Of a stretch of DNA of 64,000 bases, positions 17,464 through 27,644 are shown piece by piece. The DNA is from Entomortierella parvispora E1425 (lineage: Eukaryota; Fungi; Mortierellomycota): assembly GCA_020891255.1 (NCBI GenBank), contig BQFW01000002.1, positions 3,100,001-3,164,000 on the forward strand. Direction: 5' to 3'. Within the stretch, counting starts at the first letter, position 1. Each line of letters opens with the position of its first letter. Position numbers and translations under genes: made by a program. The notes beneath the pieces were generated by a model that saw only the letters and a list, made by a program, of their open reading frames with translations, was not told the DNA's origin and searched no databases.

Positions 17464-20400
17464 ATGGCCGCCATACGACCGCTGGCCGCTGATGTCGCCG
17501 ACGAGCTGCGCGCATCCCTAGTTGTCCATTCCCTGGAGCAATGTGCCCTGGAGCTGGTGCAGAATAGTACGTATACCAAATCAGTCGCTTTATTCTCCTG
17601 GCAGTGAGCCATAAAGAGACCTAACAGCGCTCACGTTCATCCATGCGTCCTTTGTTTAGGTCTTGACGCTAATGCTACAGTCATTGAAGTCAAGATTGAC
17701 ATTGGGAACCACAGCCTTCAAGTTTCCGATAACGGTCATGGCATCTCGAGCAAGGACATGGACCTGATTGGAACACGATATGGTACAAAGCGCGCACTTT
17801 CTCGACCAGCTGCCTATGATAGAATGCATTTTAACAAAGTGTGGATGATTTTTGAACCGGTGTAGCCACTTCGAAATGTTCCACTATTGACGACCTCAAG
17901 CGGATCAAAACATATGGCTTCCGAGGTGAAGGTGAGCTAGCATCTGTGGAGGCACTTTCATGTTTTAAAAAGCTATGACTTCTGTCCTTACTGTGCTGTC
18001 ACTCTTTGTCATAGCAATTGCTGCAATCGCAGACATGTCCCTGATCGACCTTGTATCTCGACCTCGCTCGCAAGAGCACAGTTTTTCAGCCATATTCAAA
18101 GGAGGAGATCGCTTGTTCTGTGGAATGTCAAGCAAGCAGCCGCGTTTTGGTCATGGTTCTACCGCCACCGTTCGCGATCTGTTTTACAAAGTAAATTTCA
18201 TACGCGTTTTCAGTCTTGTTAGCATGAACGTTTGTTTAACATGCGTACTTTACTGTGATACCTAGTACCCAGTCCGGCAGCGGTATTGGTCAGATGCGTC
18301 AGCAGCCAAGGTGGATGCAGAGCTGGAAAAAGTTAAACGCGCTTTGGAGACGCTGGCCTTGGTGACGCCCCACGTAGCCTTAACAGTTATCGACATGTCA
18401 AAAGACGTAAAGATTCTCTCTTGCCGTAAAGCCGACTCCTTTCTTCAGAGAATTACCATGATCCTCGGACAAGGATTGGCCTCTGCTTTAACCTATGTGC
18501 ACTCGCCGGCAGACGAAAGCCATCTTTACACGTTCTCGGGCTATATTTCGACAGTTGGACACTACACCCGCCTTCACCAGTATATTTTTCTGAACAATCG
18601 ACCTGTGCGATACGATAATCTCCTTAAATTTATGATCTCGATCTTTCAGCAATCCAGCTTCTCCAAGGACAGCATCCGAGATGGCGAGACCGAGGATACA
18701 CGAAGGTTAAGAGAAAAGCACCCTGTATTCGTGCTTACATTGACATGCCCGACAAGCCATTACAATATATGCGCGGATCCTTCTAAGGTCACCGTTGAGT
18801 TTGAGGTAAGATATCTACTACCTGGATGTATTTCCGATACCGCCGTTTGTTTTAGTATACTAATATCTCTTTATAATTTTACAATTACCACAGGACGAAG
18901 AGCCTGTATTTCAAATCGTAAGGAACACAGTTATCGGATTTCTAGAGCGGCATCATCTACTCTCTCGGTCAGCAGCCATGACTCTGCGTCATCAAACTGG
19001 TGTGAAGAAACAAAAATCAAAGTCCTCCAGTAGGAGTCTTATCCCGCCGTACCTCGTTCCTGAATTGGTCACCAATTCTTCCTCTTCACGCGTGAAATCT
19101 TCGAGACCGTCAAAAACACGGCCTGCAGACCAATGCTTGAGAGATAACGATAGCGATGGCGTGGTTCAGAGCGCCGGAATCGATGTGGAAGACGATTTGG
19201 AATTTGAACTGGACTACGACTGGATAGCATCGGAACTTCATGACGATTTCGCGAATAGCGAGGTCGACTATTCGCTTAGCCAGGAAAGTGGATTAGATAA
19301 TGGCGGGACAGGGGGACCACAAACCCATGTCACGTTCGAAGCGACTAAACGAGGATACCAACGCGCATCTCTCCCTCATGGAAAACCATCCGAGAGTCTT
19401 ATGGGATTATCCGATAGCTATACAGAGCCTCAATCAATATCAAAGCGGGGTAGAACCTCTCGGATATGGGCAAAAGACGTATTACGAAAGTGGGTCAACC
19501 CTGTTTTTAGTCTTCCTTCGAGAGAAGTATCGGCCATCCCAACTTTATCGCTGGATACTAGCCTCAATGAGCGGCCGGGGTCATGGCCTGGATCAAGCAG
19601 CAGCTCAGTGGCAAAGCGTAGCAGTCGGTTTTTCACTTCAGCCGGGGATAGTAGTCATTTTGATGCCAGATACATTCAGTTGTCCAAGCATAGTCTTCAG
19701 ACTTCCCGCGTTATCGCACAAGTGGATCTCAAATTTATTCTTTGTGCCCTGAGTGTAGAGCTGGAGAATCCTTTGGCAATGTCACATTCAGAGCCCCCGC
19801 GTGTAACAGGAGAGCCTAGCAACAATCAGACATCGGAGAGTTCCACACGAACAGTATTGGCCGTTGTTGATCAGCATGCTGCAGACGAGCGAGTACGGGT
19901 GGAGAATCTGATACGGCAAATGTGCGTTTGCTCTCAAATGGGATCAGGAACCGCCTATGTTGTTGACAGTCAGGAGCGGCCCGTTGTTGGTTCAACTTTC
20001 AGTCCTCTTCAAGGTATTCTGCATAGAGTCGACAGTATGAGTTTGTTGCCTCCATTACCAATCACCCTGACGCGACGTGAATGGCACAGTGCCCAGCAAT
20101 TTTCAGAGTGGCTATACCGGTGGGGCATAGTATTAACTCAGAGACCGCCGTTGCCACATCAGCCATCCGAGGACGATGGTGACTCAGAGATGTATGAGGT
20201 GGATCCACTTTTGGTCTCACGTCATTTCACTTCAACCCAGGATGACCAGGATATGGAGGATACTTTCTGCGCTGGCAGCGCCAATGGAGATATACCCCGC
20301 CCCCCTTCTACAGAATCCGACTTTATTCAAGGATATGTCACAGTGCTGCCTCGCGTCGTTGCCGACCGCTGTGTTGTTGATAGCTCGTTGACCCAAGACT

Positions 20401-21005
20401 TGATCAAGGATACCATAAGTTGGGGAGAGGAAAGTCGACACAGTCGCCATTCAGGCAACGGTCTAAGTACTGGTCTTTCCTTGGCTCCCTCTGAAGGTAA
20501 ACATTGATATAGTGTATCGACCCCGTTTTTTGACCTTTTTTTTTTTTTTTGGTCTAATCTCGCCTTTTTTTTTTTTTTTTTTTTTAAAAAATACATAGAT
20601 GACCGAAATGAGTGGCTTCGTTGCATACAAGGCTGCCCGCGCGCAATCTTGGACATTGTCAACTCTAAAGCCTGTCGAGGCGCCATTATGTTCAATGACG
20701 CACTATCGTTCCAGCAGTGTCAAGATCTCGTCCAAAACATGGCTCGGTGTGCGTTTCCTTTTCAATGTGCTCACGGTCGTCCGAGTATTGTGCCGTTGAC
20801 GCTCTTTGATCGAGAGCCACCACCGCGTCGCAGATACCATGGTCGTCTCCAGCCATCAGAATTGAGCGACAGGTCTCAGGCCCACCCTCTTCAACGATGG
20901 TCAGGCAGACAGGAACCATTCGGGTCAAGGGCCGACACCCCACACGGGGGATCTAGGGTGACATATCTCGATTCCGCAAAGTGGAAAGCATGGAAAAGAG
21001 AATAG
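17464..21005 (+). CDS. MLH3: MutL-gamma subunit MLH3, multi-exon
   Basis: GHKL ATPase motifs ELVQNSLDA, VSDNGHG and TYGFRGEA. Endonuclease motif DQHAADERVRVE, then ACRGAIMFND and FQCAHGRPS. Confidence 0.93.
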
Positions 21006-21150: not shown

Positions 21151-24100
21151 CTAGGTAGCGTTGGGGGATGGCAAAACCTTGGTGCTCAAGGTGGATTCCA
21201 AGGTGGATTCCAAGGCTGGTCCCATGGAAGAGTAGGAACGTTGAGATGAGATACCCTCATTCTTGTCCCTGTTTGCCTCCTCGTTCTTCTCCCCCTCTTC
21301 CTCTGACATCACAATATCTTCTGAATCCAAAAGGATTTCCTTTGCATCAATCGCTTGGCCTGCCAATCCTTTAACGGTGCCAGAAGCAGCGGTAAAAGGC
21401 GATGATAGCTGCAGCTCCTGGCCAATCTGGTGGTACTGAACCGGGCCGCGGGGTGGGGGCACAGGTAGGCCAGCAAAGGGTCGCCTGTTAAAGTAGTCCT
21501 CTGGAGGTCCGTAACGGTGAAGGCCATCCTTGTGACTCCCGCCTGGCTGTGCTGTAGGAGCTGAGGACGAAAAAGAGGATGAGGAGGCAGAGGTGGTGGA
21601 TTCTTGATCGGAAGACGGTGTGAAGACGGCCATGGAACTCATCAGGGGTGGGAGATCCTGTGGACTGTGAACCACAGAATAGTAGTGTCTACTCTCATGG
21701 GACGTGGCCAGAGCTGCAGGCGGAAGGAAAGTTCCAGTGACGGAAGGCTCATAGGGCGAAGGTGGGTAAGAGGTGTATGGAGTGGAGCTGATGGGAGTGC
21801 TGGCTCCACTGCTAAAGATTGTCAGCAGAGCCTCTGCTGCTGCAACCTCCGCAACCGAGTCAAGCGACAGGGAAACCGTTCGAGAATGAGTCGAGGATGT
21901 CGAAGGATAAATGGGGCTGTATGCGCCATTGGCGCCGCTGCAGCTACCACCGATTGAAGGCGAATTCAATCGAGATGAGGACCACTCAGAGTCCGAGATC
22001 TCTCTTGCGGCGCGGATCAAATCCAGAATGTCATCCTTTCGCCGACTGCTGCTACTACTGTTGCCGCCACCGCCACCGCTTCCACTGTCCTCCATGCGGT
22101 AACTGCGGTTCGAGTGCATTTGCCAAGAGTCGGCCTCATTTCCCGAAGATGTGTCCTCTCGACTAAAGTCTGAGGCTTGACGTGAATATGGGTATGCACC
22201 ACTTCCGGGTCGATTAGGCATCGGACCCTGCCAGGGACTTTGTTCCACAGAGTTAAAGGCCGAAAACACGGACGAGGAGGATGAACAGGTGGGCGAAGGA
22301 ATAGGCGTCGGCACGCAGGACGGACAAAAGTATTGTCTTGAATCCTCGCCCAACTCTTCATAATCACGATCCTCCAAGCCCTTGTCGCAGGCCACATGGA
22401 CCCAAAGAGAACAGCCGTCGCAAAAGATCATGGGCGTTTCGTAATCATCATCCTGATAGATTCGGCAGCAGAGCGGACAAATGTTGCCTTTTTCGGATAA
22501 GGCTGTGCAAGATGGGCAAAGCGAAAAGTCGTGCGACCATCCCTCCACTAGACCGTGTCGGGGATGTGGATGGCGATCTTTTGTCTTTTTCTTTCCTTGT
22601 CCTCCCCCTCGGTCCAACGAAGTGGATCTCTGATGTCGACCCTTGGGAGGCGCACTATCATACGGTACGGCCGGCAGCTGAAGTTCTTGCTTTATCGTGT
22701 TTTCACCAAGGTCTCTGTCGATCGCAGGCACTCCTTTGCATACCTCCGCTGGCAGTTGGTACCCACACTCTATACAGTTCCGACATGAAAAGCATGTCCA
22801 AAAGATAGATCCCGAAAATCCAAGTTCTGTACGGGATAGTGGCGCCTTGCCGAGTCGGAGCACTTCCTTGAGACTCGGTTCCTTCTTCAACTGGCAATCC
22901 AAGTGGACCAAATTCCTGCACTGACTGCATGTCAATATCGCTACTTGCTCCTGTTTCGTTTCCCGTTCCGGTGACTTTCCCGATCCATCAAGAGCGGTAT
23001 GCGATCCTTCTTCAGGAATGGCGCCATCGATTTCCATAGACACATCGGTTTTCTCCTCCTTGAGCGGATCCAAGGTGGGAAGCTGATGAGCGGATATTTG
23101 ACAAAGCGAACAGGTCGAACACCGCGCACAAGTCCATGATCCATCCAGGAGGACAGGTTGTTCTTCCAACTTGCAGTCCGCATAGAACTCGACTCTACAG
23201 TCGCGGCATCGAACGGTTTTTCTGTTGTCCTGCTGAATAGGTGGCGACAAAGGCTTATCCAAGGTAGGGCCTACAACCTTCTCGGTGTTTGGTGTTGTCG
23301 AAGGGATACAAACTCCACACGCGTCTGGTGACAGGGAGGACGAAGAGTTCAATACTTCCATCGACAGGACTTTGAACAGTCGTAGGGTGGGTATCGCAGA
23401 CTGGCCAGATGAGTGCGCAGCAGAGGCGATTTCCTGACGACGTCTTGCAACGCTTTCCAGAGTTAGAGCAGTGGGTCGTCGATGTTTGTTCCTGTGACCC
23501 AGAGTCGAGGCTGAATCCTGCATGGCGAAGAGGGCTCCTGCGGCCTCTAAATGAAGCTGGCGATTCTCAAAGAGCTCAGACGAGACCATGCCTGAGAGAT
23601 CGGAGAGGGTCCGTTTGCGCTGACGTCTTATTGGCTCTCTTCCCTTATCCTTTCCATGACCATTATTCTCTGACTGCGTTGCGATCCGCAGAGCTGCCTT
23701 TTCTGCAGCTCGGGCTGAGGGTCTTTTTCTTTTTTTCCTGTCGTATGAAGCATCATCTATATTATACAAGGGAGAGCGAGCACATAGTGTTAGAAAACCC
23801 ATATACGGTGGATGGTGAGCTATTATCTCTTTGAAAGAGTCCTTTTTTTTTGGTCTTACCAGCTCCAGAAGCACCATTCTCTGTGGCTTCTGATACGTCG
23901 TCAGTCATATCCGCGAGGTATCTCTTTCGCAACACATCCAGCGAAACCTCCGCCATGCCCTGCCCTGCAAACATTGTTTGCAAGGAGGCATCTTGGTGGA
24001 TCGAGATCTTGATGGCCGACCATCCATTGACGGCTACTTTTCCTGTCCTCCCAGCCTTGACCATGGCTGTGGCCCAAGCACTTGGGGTTTCATATTCGTT

Positions 24101-25048
24101 CTGTAGTAACGGAACGAGTGCGGCCGGCTCAGTTCCAGTTGCCTGAGGAAGCAGTGTCCCCTTTTCTGTCACAAGGGCGCTGTGTTCCCGAAAGACTGCT
24201 AGAGTGTTCGCAGGAAGGTAGCCAGTGGAGACGAGGTTGAAGAGGTTAACTCTCTGTTGACTTGTTGGCTTGAGTGTAGGTGACCTGAGATCATTTGGCC
24301 GAGACGCTCCTGAGGACCCCTGTTTCTCCTTGTCTCGGACCATGCCGCCTATCCGCTTTGAATCGGTGCCGTCCTGAGGTTGGGATGGTTGAGAGGTGGA
24401 AAGAGAAGCAGACGAGGATGGTTCTAGATCTGAGAGACGTCCTGTGGACGAATGTCCGGGTTGGTTCCCTTCGCCAGGTCCTGTTTGAATTTGGTTGTAA
24501 TCCTGAGAGAGCATGGCCTCCCCTGAAGCCATCGAGTAGGGTCTCGTCTTCCTTTCTCTTGGAACGGTGATCCTGGATAGATCTCTGCCTGAAAACGCGT
24601 AAGGTGAGGCATTGTTGTGGGATATACTGAGAGACGTCAGGGAGTTGGCAGTAGCGGTGACAGGGCTGGCGAGTGGTGAAGGCATCGAGCTATTGTTGCC
24701 GGTCCACGCCGAGTGCGTATCGTACGAGAGCGATCGGTTGTGTCTGAGTGGAGGGGGTGGTGGACGCTTTGCTCCTGTTCTCGTTCCAAAGGATGCGCCT
24801 GTAGACATGTCGCGACCATGGTCATTGCTTGGGTCCAGGGCCATGTCGAGCTCATTCTCGCTCTGAATTTGCTTCGTGTCTTCGCTTTCATCGTCCGATT
24901 CCAGACTGCTCCGCATGCCCCTTGATTCTCGAAAATGAGATGTTGACGTTGAGATGAGCATGGGTCGACGGGATGGTGTTGGAGACCGTTCCTGAAGGTT
25001 GTCGTCGACCTCGGCCGATGACATGGCAGTTGTTGCTGGTGCCTGCAT
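21151..25048 (-). CDS. RAMA domain + MLL/Trithorax-type triple PHD finger protein, about 1264 aa, no SET domain
   Basis: Exons 25048-23860 and 23756-21151 (GT-AG intron 23859-23757) total 3795 nt in frame. RAMA-like block at 24250-23915. Cys/His PHD pattern at about 23330-22310, including WSHDFSLC...KGNICPLC...YQDDDYETPMIFCDGCSLWVHVAC. Confidence 0.82.
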
Positions 25049-25969: not shown

Positions 25970-27644
25970 ATGCTCCGCGTACCTGAGCCGCAGGATTTGA
26001 TCGAAACGCGTCGGCTACGTGCCAGCGTGAACGAGGTAACATTGTAGACTAGAACAGGGCCAGCTCGCTAACATTGAAAACTCGAGATGCTTTCTGAAAA
26101 CAACCACCGAACGACTCTTAAGTCTTCTTTTTTTTTTTTTTTTTTTTTTGAAATCAGATGCCTTTGCTACAGGTGGATCAGTTGAAAAGTCTAGGAGAGC
26201 AGCAGCGAGCCTATGCGATGCTGAGTATTATGGCCCAGAGCTACGTCTGGGGACACAGCTTGGATATTGCCCATAGGAGGCCACGCAGTCGAATCCCCAG
26301 GAATTGACATTTCATTTTATTCTTGTAATTAGTCCATCCCTGAATCCTTGGCGGTGCCGTGGCAAGCCATTGCTGATGTCCTGGACATTCCTCCAGCTCT
26401 TACCTATGCATCCACCGATCTTTGGAACTGGAAACTCATTGATGAAAATGGACCGTATTCACTTGAGTAGGAACTCACATCTCTTACTTTCGTTCCTCAA
26501 TACCCGTTGATTTTTGTTATTAACTTTCGATGTGCCTTTCTTTTTGTCGATCGAAGGAACCTCACGACCTTGTTTACCATGACAGGAACCAAAGACGAGA
26601 TTTGGTTCAACATCGTGTCCGTGATGATCGAGGTTGAGGGAGGTGCGGCCTTGAAGCCCTTGTTGGAGGCCATGCAGGCAGTACGAGAGGACGATATAGA
26701 GACTGTTGTCCAAAAACTCAATCTCGCTTTGCCGCAATTGCAAAAAACCAGGAAAGCGACTGACAGAACCGCGTTTTAATTTTCTTTGATCAAAAAAAAA
26801 AAAAAAAAAAAAATCACAATCGATCCTCTTGCCTCTCCAAGCTCGGATGTTTGAAGGATGTGATCCCGTCGTGTTTTACTGGAAGATCCGAAAGTTTCTG
26901 TTAGGTTCGGAAAACAATGCTGGTCTAGGCCTTCCCAACGGATTGGTTTACTCTGGTGTCGATAACAACAAGCCCAAGCATTTCATGGGCGCCACCACGG
27001 GTCAGTCCTCCATCTTCCCTGCCCTGGATGTGATTTTGGGCATTCAGCACTTTGAAAAAGATCCATCGCCATCACCGCAGCAGCAGCAACCCTCTTCCAC
27101 AACAAGAACAGACGCAGAAACAACGACCACTTTCCAGAATGGCCAAAAGGCACTCAATGGCTGTGGGGGCGGCAGCGGCTGCGCTGGCAGAGCACCCAAC
27201 AGCATGTTGGAAAAGATGCGCTCGTACATGCCTGCACCGCATCGCGCCTTCTTGAGCCATTTGGCTCAAGTCGCCAATCTACGCGACTTTGTCCTACAAA
27301 AGTCGAAGGGCGAAGGCTTTGATTCGGACCCTGCTACGCAGGCGTTGGCCCAATCTACCGCCTGTGTGCACGAGGTCAAGTTGTTTCGAGATGCACACAT
27401 TCAGATCGTTACCCGATACATCATCACCCAAGCCCGTCGTGGTCCGCTAGAGGGCTGGGAAGATTACAGGGTCAAGATCGTGGAGGCTACAGCACAGGGA
27501 ATCAAAAGCAGCAGTCATGGTGATGTGGAAACGGAGAAAGCCCCCATGCGAGGATCTGGAGGAAGCGATCTGGTGCCGTTTCTTAAAACCAATCGCGACG
27601 AAACTCAATCAACAAAGGTCATCCAGTCCGCCTCTAAGAAATGA
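25970..27644 (+). pseudogene. IDO: Indoleamine 2,3-dioxygenase (BNA2/IDO-like), apparently disrupted
   Basis: IDO motifs RAYAMLSIMAQSYVWG, LAVPW, PALTYASTDLWNW, RMFEGCDPVVFYWKIR, QSSIFPALD, MRSYMPAPHR, FRDAHIQIVTRYII and RGSGGSDLVPFLK. Two intron positions lack a phase-compatible GT donor, and the N-terminal GFLP/PWE block is missing. Confidence 0.72.

What the first reader, a model, noticed from the sequence alone, without database searches (positions are those of the whole stretch)
23915..24250. RAMA domain fused to a predicted H3K4me3-reading PHD cassette: candidate 6mA/histone dual reader
Seen: exon 1 encodes VNLFNLVSTGYL...ALVTEKGTL...YETPSAWATAM...VNGW...SLDVLRKRYL, spliced in frame to the triple-PHD region. 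Established: the pattern (LxxLxxxGxL, GxI, SPSAWA, NGW, LxxxRxxY) is that of the RAMA domain, found in MPND and restriction-associated proteins and proposed to read N6-methyladenine DNA. Symmetric ApT 6mA marks active promoters in many early-diverging fungi, where H3K4me3 also sits. Inference: this SET-less protein could couple DNA 6mA to H3K4me3 chromatin, a reader module I do not know to be characterised in fungi. Whether this species has 6mA is unknown.
Basis: partly seen in the sequence, partly recalled or inferred. Interest (0 to 1): 0.78.

Follow-up and report, generated by a model that had tools for sequence, protein, structure and literature searches.

The report
Fungal Trithorax-like protein with RAMA domain
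This Mortierella-type fungal gene joins a DNA-binding RAMA domain (proposed elsewhere to sense methylated adenine) to an MLL-type histone-reading PHD cassette. It is a shortened member of an apparently undescribed family of Trithorax-like proteins in early-diverging fungi, and so a concrete but untested candidate for the missing fungal 6mA reader.

Summary
A minus-strand gene (25048-21151, one 103-nt GT..AG intron) encodes 1264 aa.

- **PHD cassette.** PHD3 matches MLL1 PHD3 (E 9e-11) and keeps all four cage residues that hold H3K4me3.
- **Fusion.** Orthologous gene models and one intron-free homologue support a single coding sequence. No RNA run was listed for this genome.
- **New context.** Relatives from Allomyces, Kickxellomycotina, Geosiphon, Endogonales and Mortierella continue into ePHD-FYRN-SET. 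They are RAMA-bearing KMT2/Trithorax-like proteins. This lineage has lost that catalytic half but remains under strong purifying selection.

DNA plus H3K4me3 binding is well supported by inference. Selectivity for 6mA is untested, and the published results for MPND conflict. I found no paper describing this fungal family.

The parts
21151..25048 (-). Whole coding region of the RAMA-PHD gene (1264 aa, two exons)
   Evidence: ORF list and splice reconstruction. The start MQAP... matches the orthologues' starts.
23860..25048 (-). Exon 1: low-complexity N-terminus plus the RAMA domain
23757..23859 (-). Intron, 103 nt, GT..AG, phase 1, CTAAC-like branch site
   Evidence: The orthologous loci differ from their CDS length by 87-99 nt, consistent with one short intron. 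P0019 from a close relative reads into the same intron.
21151..23756 (-). Exon 2: nuclear localisation signal, conserved helical motifs, PHD1-3, Ser/Pro-rich tail, stop codon
23909..24265 (-). RAMA domain (about aa 262-380)
24071..24088 (-). TPSAWA motif (T321, P322, S323), equivalent to MPND S113-P-S115 that contacts the DNA backbone
   Evidence: Alignment mapped onto PMC9963953. P and S are invariant in A2.
24017..24031 (-). VNGWS motif (G342, W343), equivalent to MPND W135, which is needed for DNA binding
   Evidence: G and W are invariant in A2.
23722..23742 (-). DRKKRKR basic cluster, a likely nuclear localisation signal just after the splice junction
   Evidence: Invariant in all aligned orthologues. 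The NLS role is inferred.
23521..23559 (-). Conserved helical motif QLHLEAAGALFAM (aa 463-475)
   Evidence: Conservation 0.92 across orthologues. Function unknown.
23119..23319 (-). PHD1 (aa 543-609). The zinc-ligand His is Tyr588 in this species.
   Evidence: Cys pattern and alignment. Weak Pfam PHD stretches.
22783..23112 (-). PHD2 with a long insert (aa 612-721). It abuts PHD1 as in MLL (CARC-STC-SLC).
22315..22539 (-). WSHDFSLC zinc knuckle plus PHD3 (aa 803-877), with cage residues Y830, Y835, M839 and W848
   Evidence: phmmer hits MLL1 PHD3 2kyu at E 9.3e-11, and also 3lqh. Pfam PHD 36.1 bits. Residue map. pN 0.028 against pS 0.855.
21811..22029 (-). Two conserved C-terminal motifs: ILDLIRAAREIS (aa 973-984) and VAEVAAAEALLTIFS (aa 1031-1045)
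   Evidence: The second motif recurs in distant family members.

Best explanation
**What it is.** The gene encodes a nuclear, non-catalytic chromatin-binding protein. It is the syntenic Mortierellaceae orthologue of an early-diverging-fungal Trithorax/KMT2-like family. The ancestral layout of that family is RAMA, PHD1-3, ePHD, FYRN, SET. In this lineage the ePHD-FYRN-SET half has been lost from the locus.

**How it most likely works.** What remains is a two-handed binder.
- The RAMA domain holds duplex DNA through the conserved T/S-P-S and G-W backbone-contact motifs, as in MPND.
- PHD3 holds the H3K4me2/3 tail in a cage identical to that of MLL1 PHD3.

Together they should place the protein on H3K4me3 nucleosomes and the adjoining linker DNA at the 5' ends of active genes. 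In these fungi that is also where symmetric ApT 6mA lies. RAMA sits where animal MLL1/2 carry the CXXC domain that senses unmethylated CpG.

**Shown and inferred.**
- Shown: domain identities, the fusion by comparison with relatives, loss of SET at this locus, and purifying selection.
- Inferred: DNA binding and H3K4me3 binding.
- Open: whether RAMA prefers 6mA. My estimate is about 0.3.
For: **RAMA identity.**
- Pfam hits in every orthologue.
- The Allomyces member scores 41.6 bits, above the Pfam cut-off.
- The A2 profile hits MPND at E 2.5e-6 and CcrM at 0.0039.

**DNA-contact residues.** Mutating MPND S113, S115 or W135 almost abolished DNA binding in EMSA (PMC9963953). These align with T321, S323 and W343. 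P, S, G and W are invariant in A2.

**PHD3.** It matches MLL1 PHD3 at E 9.3e-11 with Y, Y, M, W and H conserved (PMC8022399).

**One gene.** Orthologous single gene models exist in more than 8 genera. One homologue has an intron-free ORF. The alignment across the junction is gap-free.

**Family and loss of SET.**
- Long forms carry ePHD, FYRN and SET.
- No such sequence occurs anywhere in the 64-kb window.
- IDO lies upstream here as in relatives.
- In M. alpina the SET-coding half lies between this gene's PHD part and a kinase gene. In Gryganskiella the kinase gene follows directly.

**Selection.** Synonymous sites are saturated, yet pN is 0.065 for RAMA and 0.028 for PHD3.

**Context.** Mortierellomycota have high 6mA (PMC11258239). 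Across AMT1-encoding eukaryotes 6mA co-localises with H3K4me3, and in ciliates and Chlamydomonas it lies in linker DNA (PMC12695648).
Against: - There is no transcript evidence for this genome; none was listed.
- No binding data exist for any fungal RAMA or for this PHD3.
- MLL1 Q1587, reported as important for peptide binding, is Phe841 here.
- PHD1 has lost its zinc-ligand His in this species.
- The Pfam RAMA score of this protein is below the curated cut-off.
- The C-terminal half could still exist elsewhere in this genome. I could not search for it.
Confidence: 0.7

Rival explanations
1. **The first reader's full claim.** The RAMA domain selectively recognises symmetric 6mApT DNA. The protein would then be a true coincidence reader of 6mA and H3K4me3, coupling the two marks.
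For: - RAMA was predicted to be an m6A discriminator from its fusions with restriction-modification enzymes (PMC4738411).
- MPND RAMA bound 6mA duplex selectively in pull-downs (PMC6591016).
- The clade has high 6mA, which elsewhere co-localises with H3K4me3.
I did not check it.
- The family is essentially confined to early-diverging fungi. The one named exception is Saitoella.
Against: - The MPND crystal study found that 6mA did not change dsDNA binding, and it saw only backbone contacts. CcrM RAMA likewise makes no base contacts (PMC9963953).
- MYSM1 RAMA was not selective.
- The family occurs in phyla reported to have low 6mA (Glomeromycota, Blastocladiomycota). It was not detected in the 6mA-rich Mucorales.
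- MPND bound 6mA only in a non-ApT context.
Confidence: 0.3
2. **Modification-blind anchor.** RAMA here is a general DNA or nucleosome anchor, like an AT-hook. It adds avidity to PHD3 binding and carries no information about 6mA.
For: - Binding by MPND RAMA is sequence-independent, contacts only the backbone, and extends to histones H3/H4 (PMC9963953).
- Only the backbone-contact residues are invariant across the fungal family.
- The phyletic fit with 6mA levels is imperfect.
Against: - The domain's prokaryotic history is tied to adenine methylases and restriction enzymes.
- It is very strongly conserved in a clade with dense 6mA.
- One positive 6mA pull-down has been reported for MPND.
Confidence: 0.4
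3. **Decaying remnant.** The gene is a leftover of a Trithorax-like gene after deletion of its catalytic half and has no function of its own.
For: - The SET half is absent.
- PHD1 has a Tyr at its zinc-ligand His position.
- SET domains of related long forms are already degenerate.
Against: - The 1264-codon frame is intact.
- pN is far below a saturated pS in both RAMA and PHD3.
- The same short form is kept in Gryganskiella, Lobosporangium, Dissophora and Gamsiella.
Confidence: 0.05
4. **Two separate genes.** The RAMA exon and the PHD exon encode separate proteins, and the splice is an artefact of reading.
For: - There is no RNA evidence for this genome.
- The exon-1 frame runs on into the intron for 32 more codons to a stop.
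Against: - Canonical GT..AG ends with a branch site, in frame.
- Exon 2's only upstream ATG lies in another frame inside exon 1.
- P0012 is an intron-free ORF carrying both domains.
- All annotated orthologues are single proteins.
Confidence: 0.03

Closest known systems
MPND (animal MPN-domain protein with a RAMA domain; PDB 7YDT, 7YDW)
   Different: MPND pairs RAMA with an MPN/JAB deubiquitinase-like domain, not with PHD fingers. Sequence identity is only about 23%. The fungal domain has a longer insert between its strand and helix elements.
MLL1/KMT2A and MLL2/KMT2B (Trithorax)
   Same: The PHD1-PHD2-knuckle-PHD3 arrangement matches, including WSHDFSLC and the H3K4me3 cage of PHD3. Relatives of this gene also share ePHD, FYRN and a KMT2-type SET domain (Allomyces SET against KMT2A, E 6.6e-38).
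   Different: No CXXC, AT-hook, bromodomain or menin-binding region was found; RAMA sits N-terminal to the PHDs instead. The window protein lacks ePHD, FYR and SET entirely. Mortierellaceae long forms have a degenerate SET (ARHIRRDD where KMT2D has ARYINHSC).
RAMA architectures predicted by Iyer, Zhang and Aravind 2016 (PMC4738411)
   Same: That paper lists rare eukaryotic fusions of RAMA with PHD and with SET. It proposes that RAMA reads m6A in chromatin.
   Different: Its text names animals, chlorophytes, stramenopiles, rhodophytes and giant viruses as the RAMA-bearing lineages, not fungi. I could not see its figures or supplement. It describes no fungal Trithorax-like family.
CcrM C-terminal domain (PDB 6PBD)
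   Different: It is part of a bacterial adenine methyltransferase and has no histone-reading partner domain.
PHD-bearing p1 subunit of the AMT1 complex in ichthyosporeans (PMC12695648)
   Same: Another proposed physical link between the 6mA system and H3K4me3 through a PHD finger.
   Different: There the PHD is on the writer complex. Here a candidate DNA-mark reader is joined to the PHD, and no methyltransferase is involved.

Membership tests
RAMA domain (Pfam PF18755) | Significant sequence match to the RAMA profile | tested here: met
   E 1.6e-6 (28.4 bits) on the isolated domain. All 11 orthologues and all 16 diverse relatives match only RAMA. The score is below Pfam's curated cut-off of 35.2 for this protein, but the Allomyces family member reaches 41.6 bits. 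The A2 profile hits MPND at E 2.5e-6.
RAMA domain (Pfam PF18755) | RAMA fold as in the solved structures (MPND, CcrM) | tested here: met
RAMA domain (Pfam PF18755) | Conserved DNA-contact motifs (S-P-S-A-W and G-W) | tested here: met
   T321-P-S323-A-W and G342-W343. P, S, G and W are invariant in A2.
RAMA domain (Pfam PF18755) | Binding of duplex DNA, and preference for 6mA | not testable with these tools
   This needs EMSA, MST or similar. The published data on MPND conflict.
KMT2 / MLL / Trithorax H3K4 methyltransferases | MLL-type PHD1-PHD2-PHD3 cassette | tested here: met
   PHD3 against MLL1 PHD3 at E 9.3e-11. Abutting CxxC pairs and the WSHDFSLC knuckle are present. PHD1's His ligand is Tyr in this species.
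KMT2 / MLL / Trithorax H3K4 methyltransferases | Catalytic SET domain | tested here: not met
   No SET in the protein or anywhere in the window (tblastn with long-form relatives). SET is present in relatives. The window protein is therefore a SET-less derivative, not a KMT2 enzyme.
KMT2 / MLL / Trithorax H3K4 methyltransferases | ePHD and FYRN/FYRC | tested here: not met
   Absent here. zf-HC5HC2H and FYRN are present in Jimgerdemannia, Tieghemiomyces, Geosiphon and Allomyces relatives.
KMT2A/B subgroup | CXXC domain N-terminal to the PHDs | tested here: not met
   No zf-CXXC hit in the window protein or in eight relatives scanned. RAMA occupies that position.
MPND / MYSM1-type RAMA proteins | MPN/JAB domain C-terminal to RAMA | tested here: not met
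   No MPN/JAB hit.
H3K4me3-reading PHD fingers | Aromatic cage residues at the MLL1 positions | tested here: met
   Y830, Y835, M839 and W848 (and H850) correspond to Y1576, Y1581, M1585 and W1594 (and H1596). Q1587 is F841.
H3K4me3-reading PHD fingers | Measured binding to H3K4me3 peptide | not testable with these tools
   This needs ITC or peptide arrays.

The most novel reading that the evidence does not exclude
Early-diverging fungi ancestrally had a Trithorax/KMT2-type enzyme that is aimed by a 6mA-sensing RAMA domain. This would be the adenine-methylation counterpart of the CXXC domain that aims animal MLL1/2 at unmethylated CpG. Such an enzyme would physically couple ApT 6mA in linker DNA to H3K4 methylation on the neighbouring nucleosome. 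In Mortierellaceae the catalytic part has decayed or been lost, leaving a dedicated dual reader of 6mA and H3K4me3. That would be the first fungal 6mA reader.
Probability: 0.25. Interest if true: 0.85.

Novelty: new variant of a known kind. Interest (0 to 1): 0.62.

Why it matters
A 2026 review states that no 6mA reader has been identified in fungi and calls the identity of such readers an open question (PMC13297926). The 2025 cross-eukaryote survey says that finding readers is key to understanding 6mA (PMC12695648). It also leaves unexplained why 6mA and H3K4me3 coincide.

This gene family offers a specific, clonable candidate. It has a conserved RAMA domain joined in one protein to the H3K4me3-binding PHD3 of the MLL type, and ancestrally to a KMT2-type SET domain. 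It occurs in lineages that carry dense 6mA.

The public precomputed annotation of the Mortierellaceae proteins lists only PHD, so the RAMA domain there is effectively hidden. Even if RAMA proves blind to 6mA, two points stand. Early-diverging fungi have an MLL-like Trithorax family with RAMA in place of CXXC. And that family shows stepwise decay and loss of SET. Both bear on how H3K4 methylation systems evolved.

Tried and rejected
- **RNA evidence.** The look-up of sequencing runs listed no run for this sequence. Read laying was therefore not used, and the splice has no direct support from reads.
- **Mortierellaceae-only profile (A1) against PDB sequences.** It found no RAMA structure. Only the broader fungal profile A2 did.
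- **NCBIfam.** No hit for either exon.
- **The missing ePHD-FYR-SET half.** tblastn of four long-form relatives found nothing in the window. A word search with the C-terminal half of P0017 found separate C-half gene models only in Mortierella and Linnemannia. At least one of these is an annotation split of a continuous ORF.
- **dN/dS.** It could not be given as a ratio because synonymous sites are saturated. I report pN and pS instead.
- **Bacterial-type promoter and terminator scan downstream of the stop.** It is irrelevant for a fungus and found nothing.
- **Literature.** Searches for a described fungal RAMA, KMT2 or Trithorax family returned nothing relevant. The figures and supplement of Iyer et al. 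2016 were not available, so an unmentioned fungal entry there cannot be excluded.
Full report
**What is at the coordinates.** The finding lies on the minus strand. An ORF starts at ATG 25048 and encodes a Ser/Pro-rich N-terminus. The exon ends at 23860 before a GTAAG donor. The 103-nt intron (23859-23757) has a CTAAC-like branch site and a TAG acceptor. Joining in phase 1 continues the frame to the stop at 21151. The product is 1264 aa with one terminal stop.

**Organism and orthologues.** A word-based search with exon 2 returned only Mortierellaceae proteins: Gryganskiella, Dissophora, Gamsiella, Lobosporangium, Mortierella, Linnemannia and Haplosporangium. The best named match is Gryganskiella cystojenkinii, at 55% identity over exon 2. 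Their precomputed Pfam annotation lists only PHD. The sequences nevertheless show that these single proteins carry both the RAMA-like block and the PHD region. Upstream, a divergent indoleamine 2,3-dioxygenase gene is syntenic with Lobosporangium and Linnemannia. Downstream, a convergent ORF ending at 20507 carries a MutL_C domain.

**Is it a RAMA domain?** Four lines of evidence agree.
- *Pfam.* PF18755 scores 23.9 bits on exon 1 and 28.4 bits (E 1.6e-6) on the isolated domain. Both are below the curated cut-off of 35.2. However, all 11 orthologues hit RAMA (best E 2.7e-7); the only other matches are three single-member hits at E 0.14-0.2.
- *Exhaustive profile search.* A profile of the 11 orthologues, searched against 1.84 billion representative proteins, found only 39 proteins. 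Every named one is fungal. They come from Mortierellaceae, Jimgerdemannia (Endogonales), Dimargaris, Dispira and Tieghemiomyces, Coemansia, Spiromyces and Mycoemilia, Geosiphon, Allomyces and, oddly, the ascomycete Saitoella.
- *Links to bona fide RAMA.* The Allomyces protein, named 'trithorax-like', passes the Pfam cut-off at 41.6 bits. A 16-sequence alignment of these diverse domains (A2) matches Pfam RAMA in every member, best E 1.8e-18. As a profile it hits the MPND RAMA chain 7YDT at E 2.5e-6 over almost the full domain, and CcrM at 0.0039.

I therefore accept RAMA membership. The caveat is that the fold evidence rests on a predicted model.

**Functional residues of RAMA.** In mouse MPND, S113, S115 and W135 make the hydrogen bonds to the DNA backbone. 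Each alanine mutant almost loses DNA binding (PMC9963953). I mapped these residues through the HMMER alignment, where the chain index equals the residue number plus one. They correspond to T321, S323 and W343 of this protein. P322, S323, G342 and W343 are invariant across the 16 fungal domains. Duplex-DNA binding is thus a well-founded inference.

**The PHD cassette.** Exon 2 matches the solved MLL1 PHD3 structures (2KYU at E 9.3e-11; 3LQH, 3LQI and 3LQJ). The MLL1 cage that holds trimethyl-lysine is Y1576, Y1581, M1585 and W1594, and H1596 and Q1587 are also important (PMC8022399). Here the equivalents are Y830, Y835, M839, W848 and H850, but Q1587 is F841.

The arrangement of abutting CxxC pairs (CARC-STC-SLC; CFSC-RNC-IEC) and the WSHDFSLC knuckle before PHD3 also follow MLL. 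That comparison of the arrangement with MLL is from my own knowledge of the MLL sequence. PHD3 with its extension is the most conserved block of the protein, PHD1 and PHD2 are much less conserved. In this species alone the PHD1 zinc-ligand His is Tyr588.

**Is the fusion real?** No RNA run was listed for this sequence, so there is no direct evidence. Four indirect points support it.
- The spliced product aligns without a gap to ten relatives across the junction and restores the invariant DRKKRKR cluster.
- Homologue P0012 is encoded by a single uninterrupted ORF (L001:263-3283). It carries both RAMA (E 3.3e-5) and PHD (E 1.4e-7).
- The Gryganskiella and Lobosporangium loci differ from their CDS length by 99 and 87 nt. 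That is consistent with the same single short intron.
- Exon 2 has no independent in-frame start codon.

**The wider family, which changes the picture.** Many hits of the exhaustive search are 1500-2000 aa long. Beyond the PHD cassette they continue into an extended PHD (zf-HC5HC2H), FYRN and a SET domain.
- The Allomyces SET is a canonical KMT2A-type domain. It scores E 6.6e-38 and keeps NHSCEPNC and ELTYDYKF.
- The Entomortierella long form still matches KMT2C/D best (E 2e-12). However, it reads ARHIRRDD where KMT2D has ARYINHSC, and ELTMKY where KMT2D has ELTYDY. It also ends without a post-SET region, so it is probably inactive.

In M. alpina the two halves are one continuous ORF that one annotation had split. 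There the order is N-half, C-half with SET, then a convergent kinase gene. In Gryganskiella the kinase gene follows the N-half directly. In Lobosporangium an NmrA-like gene follows. In this window a MutL-type ORF follows, and tblastn finds no ePHD, FYR or SET anywhere in 64 kb.

Every outgroup has the long form. The short form here is therefore derived by loss of the catalytic half. Relocation elsewhere in the genome remains possible, and I could not test it. Despite the loss, synonymous sites are saturated (pS 0.76-1.0) while pN is 0.065 for RAMA and 0.028 for PHD3 against Gryganskiella. The short protein is under strong purifying selection.

**How it most likely works.** The protein has a DNA-binding RAMA domain, a basic nuclear-targeting cluster, and a PHD3 with an intact H3K4me2/3 cage. 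It has no catalytic domain. The most economical reading is a bivalent chromatin binder that sits on H3K4me3 nucleosomes and adjacent DNA at the 5' ends of active genes. It may recruit partners through the conserved helical motifs at aa 463-475, 973-984 and 1031-1045. RAMA sits N-terminal to the PHDs, where animal MLL1 carries CXXC, the sensor of unmethylated CpG (PMC8022399). The analogy between RAMA and CXXC is my inference.

**The 6mA question.**
- *In favour.* RAMA's prokaryotic associations led to its prediction as an m6A discriminator (PMC4738411). MPND RAMA bound a 6mA duplex selectively in one pull-down study (PMC6591016). Mortierellomycota are among the phyla with the highest 6mA, 0.8-3.8% of adenines (PMC11258239). 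Lobosporangium is in the 6mA-profiled set (PMC8298701). Across AMT1-encoding eukaryotes 6mA co-localises with H3K4me3, and in ciliates and Chlamydomonas it lies in linker DNA (PMC12695648).
- *Against.* The MPND structural study found no effect of 6mA on affinity and no base contacts, as in CcrM (PMC9963953). MYSM1 RAMA was not selective, and MPND did not bind 6mA in a GATC context (PMC6591016). The family is present in phyla with low 6mA (Glomeromycota, Blastocladiomycota). My profile search did not detect it in Mucorales, which are rich in 6mA. That profile was built from Mortierellaceae only, so this absence is soft evidence.

I put 6mA selectivity at about 0.3.

**Novelty.** RAMA, the MLL-type PHD3 and rare RAMA fusions with PHD or SET are all known (PMC4738411). 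What I could not find in the searchable literature is any description of a fungal RAMA-bearing Trithorax/KMT2-like family, or of its SET-less derivative. The text of Iyer et al. does not list fungi among the RAMA-bearing lineages, though I could not see its figures. A 2026 review states that no fungal 6mA reader has been identified (PMC13297926). I therefore class this as a new variant of a known kind. Interest is moderate to high because it turns an open question into a simple binding experiment. It is tempered by the contested biochemistry of RAMA.

Noticed in passing
window 23182-23184 (minus strand, codon 588): The zinc-ligand His of PHD1 is Tyr (TAT) in this species only. Every aligned orthologue that covers this stretch has His. 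PHD1 may be structurally degenerate here.
   Followed up: partly
window 23521-23559 and 21811-21855 (minus strand): Two very conserved helical motifs, QLHLEAAGALFAM and VAEVAAAEALLTIFS. The second recurs in distant family members from Jimgerdemannia, Dimargaris, Geosiphon and Coemansia. From memory they resemble the Mad1-type Sin3 PAH2-interaction motif (LLEAADYL). That would imply recruitment of a deacetylase complex. I did not test this.
   Followed up: no
L005:1230-7440 (Mortierella alpina GCA_015679415.1): One annotation splits a single long RAMA-PHD-ePHD-FYR-SET gene into two models (P0006 and P0074). Frame 2 of L005:5250-5700 is open across the supposed gene boundary, and another strain's model (P0020) is fused.
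   Followed up: yes
P0017:1740-1884 (Entomortierella) and other long forms: The SET domain of Mortierellaceae long forms has lost the NHSC motif and the post-SET region, while the Allomyces homologue is canonical. This suggests stepwise decay of catalysis before the outright loss seen in the window's lineage.
   Followed up: partly
P0043 and P0066 (Saitoella, Taphrinomycotina): A RAMA domain of this fungal type also occurs in an early-diverging ascomycete, in proteins without the PHD cassette. It is the only Dikarya hit. It argues against a strict link to the AMT1-type 6mA system, which is reported lost in Dikarya.
   Followed up: no
window 26829-27644 (+) and 18978-20507 (+): Flanking genes. 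An indoleamine 2,3-dioxygenase exon (Pfam IDO, E 6e-58) lies head-to-head upstream, syntenic with Lobosporangium and Linnemannia. A MutL_C-containing ORF lies convergent downstream.
   Followed up: partly
P0033, P0045, P0048 (JGI and ENA metagenome proteins): Unnamed environmental proteins carry the same RAMA type. P0033 also has the PHD cassette and the start of an ePHD. Their organisms are unknown and could extend the family's range.
   Followed up: no
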